A DNA stretch of 64,000 nt from positions 7,006,001 to 7,070,000 of the forward strand of contig OZ059894.1 in assembly GCA_964057225.1 (NCBI GenBank), in the 5' to 3' direction. Positions within the stretch are counted from its first letter, which is position 1, and each line of letters starts with the position of its first letter. Origin of the DNA: Auanema rhodensis. Taxonomy: Eukaryota > Animalia > Nematoda. The notes beneath the pieces are model-generated. The model saw only the letters and a program-made list of their open reading frames with translations. It was not told where the DNA came from and ran no database searches. Positions 54,863 to 60,098 of this stretch are shown here, in pieces. The position numbers and the translations under genes are program-made.

Positions 54863-55976
54863 TTACGAACTTTTGATCAAAGCCATAGCTGCAAAGGAGC
54901 TGTTGTTCAGTTTTTCCATCAGATGTTTGCAAGCGGCTCCAGCATCTTTCACTAATGTATCAGTGCCAGTTGGTCCAATCAACCGTGGGAATGGAGCACG
55001 CGAATCTGGAAGAACAGTATATATATTTGCCAACTATACGCTATGAATTAAAAAATCAAAATTATTTTTACAAGAAAACAAAAACGGTATTGCGTACGTT
55101 AACGTGATTTTGAAAAAGTTAATTTTAATACGAATAAATGGAGAGAACGGTTGTTCATGGACGTGATATAAGTAAAAACAGAACTAACCAAGTTCATACA
55201 AGTTGCCATTCTTGTTTACATAGCAAATGAAATGATGTTCAACGTTTTCAATTTGAGCTGATTCTCCTTGCTGAGCAGCTTCAGCATGAGCCGCAGCTAA
55301 TGCTTCATCTAGAAAAAAAATAATTAAAGCAATAAAAGCCAAATGGATTCACTTTTGGCTAATAGATCAGACCGATCTTCAATTCCAGTGGCTTTAGCAG
55401 ATTGTAGCCATTGTGCAAAAGCATCGGTTCCTATAATAGGTACCATGAATTGTAGATGTTATAACAGATGTTATACCCGGATCAACAATTCCTTCCAAGT
55501 TGGCGAGAGCGTGGAACAGAGCAAACGTTCCACAAGCATTGGAAATCTTTTGTTTCATGAAGAATACTTCCGGATAATCTGTTTTTCCTTCCTTTTTCAA
55601 TTCTTCATAAATTGGATGCATAATATCATCAACCTGACATTAGAAATTAGTTAGTAGAGTTTCTAGTCGATACTATATGTAAGTTTGTGAGTAACATATC
55701 AACTATTTACTGCTTAATAGTATTTTTACTCAAAGAAAAGTAGGCACAAACCTTCTTATACTCAGGGAAACACAAGATCATGGCAAGTTGTGGCTTAGGC
55801 ACAAATTGAAGCACTTCATCATCGAAGCTGAACACGTCTATGCATTCTACTCCTTTCACTCCAATTTTCGATAGGTACTGAAAGCAAGAACATAGAAGGC
55901 TTCATTATATCACTTGATTTACCGGATTAATGGTCTCAGGGTTGGATTCCAATGGGGACCAAACAAATTCAGACAT
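54863..55976 (-). CDS. Ubiquitin C-terminal hydrolase (UCH-L1/L3 family, peptidase C12; ubh-1/2/3-like), copy A
   Basis: MSEFVWSPLESNPETIN..FFMKQKISNACGTFALFHAL..EHHFICYV..LYELDSRAPFP..SFAAMALIKSS*. Catalytic Q, C, H and D are intact. Confidence 0.93.
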
Positions 55977-55987
55977 TTTCACTGTAA
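55058..55987. repeat. Inverted repeat arm 1 (~930 bp, UCH copy A exons 1-5 with introns)
   Basis: Reverse complement of 57783-58713. The ORF track shows identical mirrored ORFs (55343-55654 / 58116-58427; 55394-55621 / 58149-58376). The only difference noticed is a 1-nt poly-T length change. Confidence 0.95.
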
Positions 55988-57277
55988 CACAACGATTCTG
56001 TGATTATTATAAAAATATAAGTCATATGAAATAAAGATGGTTAACGAATATTTTAATAATGAAAACGAAGCTGACAATAAGTAATATTGAAAATATCTGA
56101 TTAAATATAATCAGTAATCAACTTATAACTTAAATTATTCAATCTTGGACCGAAAATTCACAAGAGGTGTAAACAGAGCAGACGGCTGAAAGAGTGACCA
56201 GCTATTCGACCACAAAAAGCCGGGGCTGAACCAGAGGTTACATAAATGAAAAAGAAAGACAAAGCTGGTAGCGACTGGCACAATCGATAGCCAGCAGGCG
56301 GAACCATCCAATTAAAGAGATAATTAAAATCATCAACAGTCTCTTTTTTTTCATTTCGTGACTACTTCATGAGCACGAACATATTGATGACATTCATAAA
56401 GCAGGTTGCATAGATATAAAGATATGCATGTTCTCATAGAAGAAATATACTATGAAAGAACGGAAGTTATTCATCGAATTCTCAACAATTTGACAGGGTT
56501 AAAATTAGTAATATGCTGATCGTGCTGAATGATACTATACACAATGCTAAGATGAACAAGATCATATACAAACGGGCATCATATTTGCTAAAATTTCGAA
56601 ATAGCTATGAATTAGCTTTATTTACAATTAAATTAACTCGATAAAATATATAGTCAGAACAAGAGTCTTTTATTTCTAACAAACGATTCACAAAAATTAG
56701 CATAAACATAAAAAAAACTGTCGTTATTGGCTATTAGTAGCAGCTCATTTTAGTATTTTCTTTCACCAGAGGACGGTTGTATTTTCATTCGTTTCAAATA
56801 TAGAAAGCAGTTCATATCTAGCAAATCATGCAAAACAATTTAGAATTTTTGCCAGAATCAAAACCGAGATTTACTCGTGTAATGTAACTGTGTTCATAAG
56901 GATATAGAAAAGGGGCCTGCAATTATCATCCTTACAGAAATTCGAGAAAGATGCTCCAATTCAAAAAATTCGCTCCATTACGGCAGTGTCATAGCTATTA
57001 CTTGATCATTTATAACTTTATATGGTTAAGTTGTTGAAGGCTGACCAAAAATAAGCAGACAACTAATTTTTCATGGTTAAAATTGTTAATTTAGATGATG
57101 GCTATAGGAAATTTTGTGCCCATTCATTACACCCCTCAGGCAATAAACAACTTCAATTTCACTACTACAATGTATTCTTTTTTAAAGTATCAGGCTATAT
57201 TAGAAGGGTATGTAATAATTTGAACATTATATAATTTTTAATTAAAAACAATTGAATAGCTATATATACATTTAAAA

Positions 57278-57278
<1 letters not shown>

Positions 57279-57342
<64 letters not shown>
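57279..57342. repeat. (TA)n microsatellite in the spacer between the UCH inverted repeats
   Basis: About 32 uninterrupted TA units. Confidence 0.95.
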
Positions 57343-57347
<5 letters not shown>

Positions 57348-57782
57348 GTAATTTATTCTGATCATGACCAGATACTGGATCACTAAGTTTCATATCTGTC
57401 CTTCTGTTCTCAAAGTTACATGACTTTACCTCCTACATGATGATGTGATTTATATAATGTATTGATATTTATGTGAATATGAGTAGTATTGACTTACCAC
57501 TATATTAAAAATCATTGTGTTAGACATGAATTAATCAGTTGGAGTGAGCATGTTTCTCACGTTTGATCCCGTCAGTTTGATTTCTCTAGGAAAAGTCGAG
57601 AAGGATTAATTAATATTATCGAAAAAAGGACACTACTAATTGATCATAAATTAGGACGTGAGAACTGTTCCTGCTATATATACATATGTGCTGTATCCCG
57701 AAATATATTTCTCAAAATTTTGAAACTATTGTAACTAATTAACTTATATCTGTTGCTCTTGTCTTGTTGTTTGAAAGCTTAA

Positions 57783-58713
57783 TTACAGTGAAAATGTCTG
57801 AATTTGTTTGGTCCCCATTGGAATCCAACCCTGAGACCATTAATCCGGTAAATCAAGTGATATAATGAAGCCTTCTATGTTCTTGCTTTCAGTACCTATC
57901 GAAAATTGGAGTGAAAGGAGTAGAATGCATAGACGTGTTCAGCTTCGATGATGAAGTGCTTCAATTTGTGCCTAAGCCACAACTTGCCATGATCTTGTGT
58001 TTCCCTGAGTATAAGAAGGTTTGTGCCTACTTTTCTTTGAGTAAAAATACTATTAAGCAGTAAATAGTTGATATGTTACTCACAAACTTACATATAGTAT
58101 CGACTAGAAACTCTACTAACTAATTTCTAATGTCAGGTTGATGATATTATGCATCCAATTTATGAAGAATTGAAAAAGGAAGGAAAAACAGATTATCCGG
58201 AAGTATTCTTCATGAAACAAAAGATTTCCAATGCTTGTGGAACGTTTGCTCTGTTCCACGCTCTCGCCAACTTGGAAGGAATTGTTGATCCGGGTATAAC
58301 ATCTGTTATAACATCTACAATTCATGGTACCTATTATAGGAACCGATGCTTTTGCACAATGGCTACAATCTGCTAAAGCCACTGGAATTGAAGATCGGTC
58401 TGATCTATTAGCCAAAAGTGAATCCATTTGGCTTTTATTGCTTTAATTATTTTTTTTTCTAGATGAAGCATTAGCTGCGGCTCATGCTGAAGCTGCTCAG
58501 CAAGGAGAATCAGCTCAAATTGAAAACGTTGAACATCATTTCATTTGCTATGTAAACAAGAATGGCAACTTGTATGAACTTGGTTAGTTCTGTTTTTACT
58601 TATATCACGTCCATGAACAACCGTTCTCTCCATTTATTCGTATTAAAATTAACTTTTTCAAAATCACGTTAACGTACGCAATACCGTTTTTGTTTTCTTG
58701 TAAAAATAATTTT
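57783..58713. repeat. Inverted repeat arm 2 (~930 bp, UCH copy B exons 1-5 with introns)
   Basis: Reverse complement of 55058-55987. Confidence 0.95.
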
Positions 58714-58862
58714 TAGACTCCCGGGCACCATTTCCTCGGTTAATTGGAGCTACTTCAACTGATTCATTGGTGAAAGATACTGGAATAGCTTGTAAATACC
58801 TAATGAAAAAACTGCAAAAATCGTCTTTTTCTGCTATGGCTTTGATCAAGACGCTGTTATGA
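57794..58862 (+). CDS. Ubiquitin C-terminal hydrolase, copy B
   Basis: Exons 1-5 match copy A in inverted orientation. Distinct last exon DSRAPFPRLIGATSTDSLVKDTGIACKYLMKKLQKSSFSAMALIKTLL*. Confidence 0.92.
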
Positions 58863-59153
58863 AAAATAATTAAAACACTGTGAAATGATTTATTATACGA
58901 ATATATGTCTACTCAACAAGAATATGATACTTGTTCACGAAAATTCCTTGATAAGATAACATTTTTTCCGATATGTTGTTAACTACTCACCCCATGCTCT
59001 ATATGAGATTTTTGATTCAAATAAATATTACATTTACATTATTCTCCTGTTTAAATGTCTGAAGCTTTAAGATGATATCTTTTGGGTGATTTCAACTTTT
59101 TCTTCTGATATCTGATATATTTCGTTGTTTATTTTGGTAATTTTCCAGTTGCG

Positions 59154-60098
59154 ATGTCTGAAGTCACTTGGCCAGCTTTAGAATCCAACCCAGATTCCAT
59201 CAATTCCGTTCGTTTGCTTTGATGAATGACTTAATATCTGAGAGATTTACAGTTCCTTACTCGTATTGGAGTATCGGGAGTTGAATGCGTAGATGTTTAT
59301 TCTTTTGATGATGAAATGCTTGCCTTCATCCCGAGTCCACAATTAGCATTGATTCTCTGTTTTCCTTCTGATCAAGTTTGTTTCATGAAAGGTGGGAAAG
59401 GAAGAGCAATCATTCTATATCCAGGCTGCCGACTATATGGCAACTATATATAAAACTATGGAGGAAGAAGGACGTGGTAAACAGGACGACGTATTTTTTA
59501 TGCAACAGAAAATTGAGAATGTATGCTATCGTTATAATTTATGAAGATAATTTTCTATATGTAGGCTTGTGGAACATTTGCTCTGTTTCATTCTTTAGCT
59601 AATATGGACAATGTTGGTCTAGGTTATTCATTGTACAATACTGTGTTTAAAACATAGCTATTTGATAGGTGACGGTCCTTTCAAAAAATGGCTTGATGAA
59701 GCTAGAAGTAAGCCAGAAACGGAAAGATCAAATTTGCTGGCTTCAAGTAACCTTGGATTTAATAGTTCAAAGATTTACTTTCTCTCTTCAGATAATGAAT
59801 TAGCTGCAGCCCATGAAGAAACTGCTGCTAGAGGTGAGACTGAACAACCTGACAAGGTTCAATACCACTTCATTACCTATGTTGCCAAAAATGGAAATCT
59901 CTATCAGATTGGTAAAGCTCGTGTGAAAGTGGAATGTCTGACTACTTCAATTTAGACTCGTCTGCTCCTTTTCCTCGCTTAATTGGACCCACAACCTCAG
60001 AAACTCTTGTGAAAGACGCTGGTAAAGCAGTTCAAGAATTGGTTGATATTATTCAAACCTCCTCCTTTGCTGCTATGGCTCTTGTTGGAAAAGAGTAG
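59154..60098 (+). CDS. Ubiquitin C-terminal hydrolase, copy C (diverged paralogue)
   Basis: MSEVTWPALESNPDSIN..FFMQQKIEN|ACGTFALFHSL..QYHFITYV..LYQIDSSAPFP..SFAAMALVGKE*. TTCCAG acceptor 5 nt before the ATG. Confidence 0.93.

What the first reader, a model, noticed from the sequence alone, without database searches (positions are those of the whole stretch)
54863..58862. Head-to-head UCH pair: near-identical 930-bp inverted arms, different last exons, invertible 1.8-kb promoter spacer
Seen: 55058-55987 and 57783-58713 are reverse complements including introns (one poly-T difference noticed). Identity starts exactly at the trans-splice-like acceptor (TTACAG) and stops inside the last intron, 3 nt before the end of copy B's intron. 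The last exons are clearly diverged paralogues (..GPTGTDTLVKDAGAACKHLMEKLNNSSFAAMALIKSS vs ..GATSTDSLVKDTGIACKYLMKKLQKSSFSAMALIKTLL), and the upstream regions are unrelated. So an old duplicate pair has been homogenised recently over exons 1-5 only. The spacer holds a (TA)~32 tract, a known cruciform-forming fragile sequence. Inference: arm-to-arm gene conversion made a chimeric enzyme; crossover between the arms would flip the spacer and swap which promoter drives which C-terminus.
Basis: partly seen in the sequence, partly recalled or inferred. Interest (0 to 1): 0.75.

Follow-up and report, generated by a model that had tools for sequence, protein, structure and literature searches.

The report
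Gene-converted mirror pair of UCH genes
Two neighbouring mirror-image copies of a ubiquitin-recycling enzyme gene in an Auanema-like roundworm are letter-for-letter identical except for their last exon, through copy-correction (gene conversion), a well-known process; nothing yet shows that the DNA between them flips.

Summary
Arms 55058-55987 and 57783-58713 are exact reverse complements (930/931 nt, no substitutions, one A8/T9 run difference), separated by a unique 1,795-nt spacer with a (TA)32 tract. Each arm carries exons 1-5, introns 1-4 and 131 nt of intron 5 of an intact six-exon UCH-L1/L3-type gene (A on minus, B on plus).

The last exons are 75% identical (dS 0.87, dN 0.19). The 5' and 3' flanks are unrelated.

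New here:
- A third, diverged UCH gene C lies 291 nt downstream of B and probably forms an operon with it.
- B's last exon groups with one Auanema sp. JU1783 paralogue, not with A's. The pair is therefore probably older than that species split.
- The direction is unresolved. The exon 1-5 tree and A's composite intron 5 lean towards B as donor.

Best reading: non-reciprocal homogenisation (gene conversion or concerted evolution) between old inverted paralogues, stopped at the edge of homology and at a 49-nt intron heterology. This kind of event is well described in Caenorhabditis.

Spacer flipping is mechanistically sound but cannot be tested from one assembly. The scan has already noted similar gene-bearing inverted repeats elsewhere in this genome. 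Interest is modest.

The parts
54863..55005 (-). Gene A exon 6 (last exon, with stop): diverged from B's last exon
   Evidence: Gene model with acceptor TTCCAG. 75% nt and 74% aa identity to B exon 6, dS 0.87, dN 0.19. Corresponds to the C-terminal ~47 residues of UCH-L1, by homology with B's last exon, which aligns to UCH-L1 178-223.
55006..55057 (-). A-private 52-nt tail of intron 5, absent from B (49-nt heterology at the tract end)
   Evidence: Its length is that of one ordinary tiny intron at this locus (44-49 nt).
55058..55987 (-). Arm A: TTACAG acceptor, 5-nt leader, exons 1-5 (55923-55976, 55752-55877, 55477-55633, 55353-55430, 55189-55308), introns 1-4 and 131 nt of intron 5
55102..55154 (+). 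ACGT-box / Inr-like / CGGTTGT cassette inside intron 5, antisense to gene A, pointing into the spacer (mirror copy at 58617-58669 on minus)
   Evidence: Pattern search: 6 matches in the window against 0.12 expected. Spacing check. Function untested.
55988..57782 (.). Unique 1,795-nt spacer between the two 5' ends (divergent promoter region)
   Evidence: Single copy in the 181-Mb genome. No ORF over 62 aa, no tRNA, no Rfam hit. No decayed internal palindrome.
56745..56780 (+). Candidate transcription-start cassette (TCATTTT with CGGTTGT, C at +28), putative +1 at 56747, facing gene B
   Evidence: 4 of 14 CGGTTG sites in the window have TCA[TG]T at the exact distance. A lead from earlier notes; no RNA evidence.
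57279..57342 (.). (TA)32 microsatellite
57783..58713 (+). Arm B: TTACAG acceptor, exons 1-5 (57794-57847, 57893-58018, 58137-58293, 58340-58417, 58463-58582), introns 1-4 and 131 nt of intron 5
   Evidence: PF01088 on exons 2, 3 and 5.
58717..58862 (+). Gene B exon 6 (last exon, with stop)
   Evidence: Groups with Auanema sp. JU1783 paralogue 'a'.
58863..59153 (+). B-C intercistronic region: AATAAA at 59021-59026, acceptor TTTTCCAG at 59141-59148
   Evidence: Read. 291 nt from stop to ATG. SL2 RNA genes are present in the genome.
59154..60098 (+). Gene C: third, 'type 2' UCH gene with seven exons (59154-59207, 59253-59375, 59425-59520, 59565-59622, 59669-59746, 59792-59911, 59956-60098)
   Evidence: PF01088 hits. 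Model built. 56% aa identity to A/B over exons 1-5. Sister to Auanema 'c' (99/96).

Best explanation
A and B are old inverted (head-to-head) paralogues of a UCH-L1/L3-type deubiquitinase. A non-reciprocal recombination process copies one arm onto the other: interlocus gene conversion during double-strand-break repair, either as one long recent tract or, more likely, as repeated events (concerted evolution). This has made or kept everything identical from the edge of homology (the TTACAG acceptor 12 nt before the ATG) to a 49-nt heterology near the end of intron 5. That heterology acts as a 'terminator'. The 143-146-nt last exon beyond it, flanked by unrelated 3' DNA, has escaped and diverged under purifying selection. 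The two proteins therefore share an identical catalytic body (Cys and His, plus the Asp at the exon 5/6 junction) and differ only at 12 aligned positions, plus one extra C-terminal residue in B, in the ~47 residues after the catalytic Asp. B sits in the ancestral slot upstream of the type-2 gene C and is the likelier donor, with A the likelier chimera. Shown: the anatomy, the identity step, the absence of other donors, and the tree discordance. Inferred: the repair mechanism, the direction, and the barrier role of the indel.
For: Perfect 930-nt arms that include 396 nt of intron and leader, against dS 0.87 in the adjoining exon. 5' and 3' flanks are unalignable. Only A, B and C (plus one distinct locus on contig C7) carry PF01088 in 181 Mb, and C's last exon is further from both (62% and 61% nt), so there is no third donor. 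In the last-exon tree, B+Auanema_a has 100/93 support; A+B sister gives AU p=0.051; Auanema a+b sister is rejected at p=0.018. In the exon 1-5 tree, the arms group with Auanema_a at 99/93. A's intron 5 is B's intron minus 3 nt plus a private 52-nt piece the size of a normal intron here. The type1-then-type2 tandem order is conserved in hookworms, Angiostrongylus and Caenorhabditis, which places B in the ancestral position. The one homopolymer difference shows that the arms were not simply copy-pasted by the assembler. Literature: Caenorhabditis conversion tracts span 12-2,958 bp, often include introns, occur in inverted adjacent pairs such as the hsp-16 modules, and can be halted by 'terminator mutations' (PMC3966223).
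Against: No read-level data, so exact identity could be slightly overstated by polishing. The tree evidence rests on 49 columns and a single outgroup species with both paralogues. AU tests are borderline (0.051; 0.058-0.059 for the exon 1-5 alternatives). Raw identity of the arms is higher to Auanema_b (81%) than to Auanema_a (68%), which on its face would suggest the opposite direction, although Auanema_a is simply fast-evolving (30 private changes). A 930-nt tract is at the long end for Caenorhabditis. The tract end inside an otherwise unalignable intron is not collinear between A and B, which fits a microhomology junction as well as a homologous one.
Confidence: 0.78

Rival explanations
1. 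One-off non-homologous replacement. A replication template switch or break-induced copy (FoSTeS/MMBIR-type, or synthesis-dependent repair closed by microhomology end-joining) pasted 930 nt of one gene over its inverted paralogue. This is not classical homology-bounded conversion.
For: Identity runs without decay to both edges. The 3' junction lies 3 nt from B's exon 6 but 52 nt from A's, so it is not collinear. A's intron 5 looks like donor intron plus its own intron. Exons at about 75% identity would be poor substrates for a single homologous event.
Against: The 5' edge coincides with the end of all homology, and the 3' edge with a heterology; ordinary conversion kept up since duplication predicts exactly this. 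No junction microhomology longer than a T-run can be shown. The outcome is the same as conversion and cannot be told apart from one sequence.
Confidence: 0.12
2. Assembly or polishing artefact. The arms are really a few percent diverged and were homogenised by consensus polishing with multi-mapped reads, or the inverted copy is a fold-back chimera.
For: Exact identity over 930 nt is what collapse would give. Earlier notes report many exact inverted repeats in this assembly. No reads are available.
Against: The structure lies 7 Mb inside a large contig with no Ns. The arms are short enough to be spanned by any long read and are anchored by a unique spacer and unique flanks. The boundaries respect gene structure, and beyond them lie homologous but 75%-identical last exons, which no fold-back artefact creates. 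The arms differ by one homopolymer length, so they were called independently. Polishing cannot erase the roughly 25% divergence expected from the last exon.
Confidence: 0.06
3. One reading: the locus is a natural toggle. Crossovers between the arms recurrently invert the spacer, so both orientations segregate and the two promoters are swapped between the A tail and the B tail (plus gene C).
For: Intrachromatid NAHR between inverted arms inverts the spacer. In primate X palindromes about half of spacers differ in orientation between species, and one is polymorphic at 18% (PMC8327919). The arms here are perfect, and the only recognisable start cassette in the spacer faces one way.
Against: No observation of a second orientation. 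The arms are 930 nt, about ten to a thousand times shorter than the palindromes where toggling is documented. Break repair in nematodes mostly ends without crossover (own knowledge). No recombinase or other switch machinery is present in the spacer.
Confidence: 0.1

Closest known systems
Interlocus gene conversion between adjacent Caenorhabditis paralogues (hsp-16 inverted modules, hsp70 inverted pair, col-12/col-13, fog-2/ftr-1; Semple & Wolfe 1999 as reviewed in PMC3966223)
   Same: Closely spaced paralogues, head-to-head orientation allowed. Tracts include small introns. The identity block is far above flanking divergence. Tract length lies within the reported 12-2,958 bp. The tract is halted where homology ends or at a terminator mutation.
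   Different: A different gene family and a different genus. The tract covers the whole gene body except the last exon. The pair seems older than a species split, yet has no substitutions at all.
Sex-chromosome palindromes of primates with arm-to-arm conversion and spacer inversion (PMC8327919, PMC8600007)
   Same: Inverted arms kept near-identical by conversion around a unique spacer. NAHR within a chromatid predicts spacer inversion.
   Different: Arms there are 8 kb to over 1 Mb and hold whole genes. Here the arms are 0.93 kb and end inside the gene, so the product is a pair of partly identical, partly diverged genes. The location is autosomal or unknown, and no inversion has been observed.
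UCH-L1/UCH-L3 (peptidase family C12; C. elegans ubh-1/-2/-3)
   Same: A single domain of about 225 aa. PF01088. QxxxNACGT cysteine motif, HF histidine, LDS aspartate. Tail of the FSAxAL type.
   Different: A three-gene local cluster with one inverted member. No biochemical data for either tail variant.
fog-2/ftr-1-type paralogues with a shared body and a novel C-terminus (PMC3966223)
   Same: Paralogues identical or similar over the 5' exons and different in the C-terminal exon, with conversion acting on the shared part.
   Different: In fog-2 the new C-terminus was recruited from unrelated DNA. Here both last exons are homologous and conserved (dN/dS about 0.2).

Membership tests
Peptidase C12 (UCH-L1/L3 type deubiquitinase) | Match to Pfam PF01088 above the curated cut-off | tested here: met
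   Exons 2, 3 and 5 each score 35-42 bits (cut-off 27), covering profile positions 14-54, 69-103 and 137-177. Searched exon by exon only.
Peptidase C12 (UCH-L1/L3 type deubiquitinase) | Catalytic Cys in the NACGT motif, preceded by the oxyanion Gln | tested here: met
   Exon 3 aligns to human UCH-L3 residues 68-104, with the MKQ.ISNACGT block conserved.
Peptidase C12 (UCH-L1/L3 type deubiquitinase) | Catalytic His and Asp | tested here: met
   Exon 5 aligns to UCH-L1 137-175, including the HF histidine. Exon 6 aligns from residue 178. The Asp of ELD-S is the split codon at the exon 5/6 junction and falls at UCH-L1 position 176 by register.
Peptidase C12 (UCH-L1/L3 type deubiquitinase) | Ubiquitin C-terminal hydrolase activity | not testable with these tools
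   Needs a Ub-AMC or similar assay of both proteins.
Interlocus gene conversion tract | Run of identity far longer than flanking divergence allows, extending into non-coding DNA | tested here: met
   930 nt with no substitutions, including 396 non-coding nt, against 75% identity and dS 0.87 next door; P about 1e-116.
Interlocus gene conversion tract | Phylogenetic discordance: the flank shows paralogues older than a speciation while the tract shows them identical | tested here: inconclusive
   Last-exon tree: B+Auanema_a 100/93; A+B sister AU p=0.051; a+b sister p=0.018. Suggestive, but based on 49 columns and one comparison species.
Interlocus gene conversion tract | Identified donor and recipient | tested here: inconclusive
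   In the exon 1-5 tree the arms group with Auanema_a at 99/93, but the alternatives are not rejected (p=0.058-0.059). The composite intron 5 of A hints that B converted A.
Interlocus gene conversion tract | Arms confirmed by independent reads | not testable with these tools
Invertible DNA segment / NAHR toggle | Inverted repeats flanking a unique segment | tested here: met
Invertible DNA segment / NAHR toggle | Both orientations observed in reads, isolates or sister species | not testable with these tools
   Only one assembly is available.
Invertible DNA segment / NAHR toggle | Dedicated recombinase, as in programmed switches | tested here: not met
   No ORF over 62 aa in the spacer, and nothing recognisable in it.
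Nematode operon (B-C) | Same strand, roughly 100-400 nt between cistrons, poly(A) signal about 100-130 nt before a trans-splice acceptor | tested here: met
   291 nt from stop to ATG. AATAAA at 59021-59026 and acceptor at 59141-59148.
Nematode operon (B-C) | SL2 trans-splicing of the downstream gene | not testable with these tools
   SL2 RNA genes exist in the genome (4 over the Rfam cut-off), but no RNA data were available for gene C.

The most novel reading that the evidence does not exclude
The locus is a recurrent inversion toggle. Crossovers between the perfect 930-nt arms flip the 1.8-kb spacer, so wild populations carry both orientations. The single recognisable start cassette (putative +1 at 56747) then drives either the A-tail enzyme or the B-tail enzyme plus gene C. 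A related possibility is that the inward-facing antisense cassettes in intron 5 of both arms produce hairpin RNA across the repeat.
Probability: 0.1. Interest if true: 0.55.

Novelty: new member of a known kind. Interest (0 to 1): 0.3.

Why it matters
It is a clean, fully resolved example of partial concerted evolution. The catalytic body of two deubiquitinase paralogues is held identical, while only the C-terminal 47 residues and the regulatory DNA are free to differ. The tract ends map to the nucleotide: one at the edge of homology, the other at an intron heterology. The apparent orthologue of B's tail in Auanema sp. JU1783 has lost the catalytic cysteine. The locus could therefore show how conversion protects, or resets, a paralogue that elsewhere decays into a pseudo-enzyme. 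For annotation it is a warning: dating this duplicate from whole-gene Ks would make an old pair look newborn. None of this changes current understanding of gene conversion.

Tried and rejected
- **Third-donor hypothesis** (one last exon imported from another UCH gene): rejected. DNA, Pfam and protein searches of the whole 181-Mb assembly find only A, B, C and one distinct locus on contig C7. C's last exon is more distant from both.
- **Young whole-gene inverted duplication**: rejected by dS 0.87 in the last exon and unalignable flanks.
- **Spacer as transposon, gene or RNA**: single copy, no ORF, no tRNA, no Rfam hit.
- **Decayed palindrome inside the spacer**: none.
- **Sister-species synteny**: Accession numbers suggest the three Auanema sp. 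JU1783 genes share one 1.11-Mb contig but are not neighbours. I could not verify this.
- **More 'a-type' tails in other species**: a tail-only word search returned only the two Auanema proteins.
- **Neighbouring ORFs**: no Pfam match.
- **The sigma-70 promoter scan** is irrelevant to a eukaryote and showed no enrichment.
- **Joined protein**: the joined (spliced) protein was never sent to any search or folding tool. All searches were exon by exon, by reference. Joined translations were used only inside local scripts, to check the gene models and to build alignments and trees. No structure prediction was made for that reason.
- **Organism**: the contig is nematode, not human.
Full report
**Observation**

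The window belongs to a 181-Mb, 112-contig nematode assembly (contig C1, 7.006-7.070 Mb). Its closest proteins are from Auanema sp. JU1783, which agrees with earlier notes that call this an Auanema-type worm. It is not human.

The repeat finder reports two abutting inverted pairs, 55313-55987/57783-58457 and 55058-55320/58451-58713, both 100% complementary. They form one arm pair of 930 and 931 nt. The only interruption is a homopolymer difference: A8 at 55313-55320 against T9 at 58450-58458.

A global alignment of the two gene regions shows the identity profile:
- identity is 50 of 50 in every window across the arms;
- it falls to noise upstream;
- downstream there is a 49-nt gap, then about 75% identity over the last exon, then noise again.

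More sensitive local alignment finds no residual similarity in the 5' or 3' flanks and no decayed palindrome in the spacer. The spacer is 1,795 nt and single copy in the genome. It has no ORF above 62 aa, no tRNA and no Rfam match. It holds (TA)32 at 57279-57342. This is the only inverted repeat of 120 nt or more in the window.

**Anatomy**

Both copies are intact six-exon genes with GT-AG introns. A lies on the minus strand (54863-55976, 225 aa) and B on the plus strand (57794-58862, 226 aa).

I searched the exons one at a time, by reference:
- Exons 2, 3 and 5 each pass the Pfam cut-off for PF01088, Peptidase_C12.
- Exon 3 aligns to human UCH-L3 68-104, including the NACGT cysteine motif.
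- Exon 5 aligns to UCH-L1 137-175, with the catalytic His.
- Exon 6 aligns to UCH-L1 178-223.
- The catalytic Asp is the codon split across the exon 5/6 junction.

The arms therefore encode the whole catalytic body, and the last exon encodes the 46-47 residues after the Asp.

The joined protein was not sent to any search or folding tool. Joined translations were made only in local scripts, to validate the models and to build alignments and trees.

A Pfam scan of the whole genome finds PF01088 only in this cluster and at one other locus on contig C7. Within the cluster there is a third gene, C (59154-60098, plus strand, seven exons, 223 aa). It is 56% identical to A/B over exons 1-5.

C starts 291 nt after B's stop codon. 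An AATAAA lies at 59021-59026 and a TTTTCCAG acceptor at 59141-59148. The genome has SL2 RNA genes and a large SL1-like array. B and C are therefore probably an operon. This is inferred; no RNA data were available.

In trees, C is sister to a third Auanema gene and belongs with the 'type 2' UCH of Caenorhabditis. A and B belong to 'type 1'.

Several lines show that the same-strand order type 1 then type 2 is old:
- fused gene models in Necator and Angiostrongylus have type 1 at the N-terminus and type 2 at the C-terminus;
- the two genes have adjacent locus tags or accession numbers in Ancylostoma and two Caenorhabditis species.

So B occupies the ancestral slot and A is the inverted extra copy.

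**Age of the pair**

The last exons of A and B differ at 25% of nucleotides: dS 0.87, dN 0.19, ratio about 0.2. Both are therefore constrained and old. The arms have no substitutions in 930 nt, 396 of them non-coding.

With a C. elegans-like mutation rate (own knowledge, about 2.7e-9 per site per generation), the arms were last identical less than about 6e5 generations ago. The last exons parted on the order of 1e8 generations ago. This is a rough inference.

Auanema sp. JU1783 has three UCH-L genes on one contig, here called a, b and c.

*Last-exon tree* (49 columns):
- B's last exon groups with Auanema a (100/93); A is next and Auanema b is outside.
- Forcing A+B to be sisters costs 13.3 lnL (AU p=0.051).
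- Forcing a+b to be sisters is rejected (p=0.018).
- B and a share derived residues (two Lys, Ser, and the ...IKTL end) that A and b lack.

The A/B split therefore probably predates the split from that species. The support is borderline and comes from a single species. No other a-type tail exists in the protein collection.

**Direction**

- In the exon 1-5 tree (181 columns), the arms group with Auanema a (99/93) and b lies outside.
- The alternatives are not rejected (AU p=0.058 and 0.059).
- Raw identity is higher to b (81%) than to a (68%), but a carries 30 private changes.
- If the ancestor had two type-1 genes (A/b and B/a), the arms are B-type. B was then the donor and A is the chimera.
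- The structure of intron 5 points the same way. B's intron 5 (134 nt) looks complete. A's (183 nt) equals B's minus its last 3 nt, plus a private 52-nt piece. That piece is the size of an ordinary intron at this locus, where other introns are 44-49 nt.

I rate B to A at roughly two to one. It is not settled.

**Mechanism**

The best explanation is non-reciprocal homologous repair between inverted paralogues, that is, interlocus gene conversion.

The 5' limit coincides with the end of all homology. The shared TTACAG is a motif both genes need, so identity there says little about the true tract end. The 3' limit coincides with the 49-nt heterology. Beyond it lie only about 145 nt of homology next to unrelated DNA, which is a classic 'terminator' situation.

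The Katju and Bergthorsson review documents the following for Caenorhabditis (PMC3966223):
- conversion tracts of 12-2,958 bp;
- frequent inclusion of small introns;
- conversion in head-to-head pairs such as the hsp-16 modules;
- the idea of terminator mutations.

I cannot say whether one long recent tract or continued homogenisation since the duplication produced the present state. Continued homogenisation seems likelier, because exons only 75% alike, separated by unalignable introns, would be poor substrates for a single event.

The main mechanistic rival is a one-off microhomology-mediated replacement (template switch). The non-collinear 3' junction favours it, but it gives the same product.

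**Artefact check**

The structure lies deep inside a large contig without Ns. The arms are short and anchored by unique sequence. The boundaries respect the gene structure. Diverged homologous last exons lie just outside the arms, and the arms differ in one homopolymer length. A fold-back chimera or a collapse does not produce this pattern. Polishing could hide a handful of real differences but not the step from about 100% to 75%. Read-level confirmation was not possible.

**The flipping idea**

Crossover between inverted arms on one chromatid inverts the spacer. In primate X palindromes, spacer orientation differs between species in about half of cases, and one spacer is polymorphic at 18% (PMC8327919). 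The deduction is therefore sound.

Here, though, the arms are only 0.93 kb, only one orientation is seen, and there is no switch machinery. The idea is untested, not supported. Because of gene C, a flip would re-promoter a probable two-gene operon.

**Promoter cassette (a lead from earlier notes)**

Following earlier notes on this genome about an ACGT-box / initiator-like / CGGTTG cassette, I checked the window.
- There are 14 CGGTTG sites, and four have TCA[TG]T exactly 27 nt upstream.
- The full pattern occurs six times, against 0.12 expected.
- One such cassette lies in the spacer on the plus strand (putative +1 at 56747), facing B.
- A one-mismatch copy lies inside intron 5 of both arms, antisense to the UCH gene and pointing inward.

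Its meaning is open: an antisense transcript, a distal promoter for the opposite gene, or a hairpin RNA.

**Comparison and verdict**

As an enzyme, this is an ordinary UCH-L1/L3 family member (membership features met, activity untested). As a genome feature, it is a new example of a known kind: gene conversion between adjacent inverted nematode paralogues. Other follow-ups have already met this kind elsewhere in this genome.

What is a little unusual:
- the tract is clean, and it covers the whole gene except the last exon;
- the pair is apparently old;
- Auanema's counterpart of B's tail has lost the catalytic cysteine (from a deposited gene model I could not check at DNA level).

Interest is modest (0.3).

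All three word searches and the one representative search were used.

Noticed in passing
window 59154-60098 (+), with the intergenic region 58863-59153: A third, diverged UCH gene (type 2) lies 291 nt downstream of B. It has a poly(A) signal about 120 nt before a trans-splice-like acceptor, so B and C are probably an operon. The type1-then-type2 tandem order is conserved in hookworms, Angiostrongylus and Caenorhabditis.
   Followed up: partly
window 55102-55154 (+) and 58617-58669 (-): Intron 5 of both arms holds an ACGT-box / Inr-like (GTTAATTTT) / CGGTTGT cassette with the exact 27-nt spacing of this genome's putative start cassettes. It is antisense to the UCH gene and points into the spacer. 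It could give antisense or hairpin transcripts, or serve as a distal promoter for the opposite gene.
   Followed up: partly
window 56745-56780 (+); also 6611 (-), 17343 (+), 63479 (+): TCATTTT followed by CGGTTGT with the C at +28 recurs at 4 of 14 CGGTTG sites in the window. The copy in the spacer faces gene B, about 1.04 kb upstream of its acceptor.
   Followed up: partly
protein P0003 (Auanema sp. JU1783, CAI4225104.1): The Auanema paralogue whose tail matches B's has HTDSV in place of NACGT, so the catalytic Cys is lost. It also carries 30 private substitutions in exons 1-5. It is a candidate pseudo-deubiquitinase, or a faulty gene model.
   Followed up: no
G000 contig C3, about 6.74-7.10 Mb: A large tandem array (51 or more scored copies) of full-length SL1-like RNA genes. 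All score just under the Rfam gathering threshold (54-62 bits against 75).
   Followed up: no
window 58019-58136 and 55634-55751: Intron 2 of A and B is 118 nt, more than twice the 44-49 nt norm at this locus. Its content was not examined.
   Followed up: no
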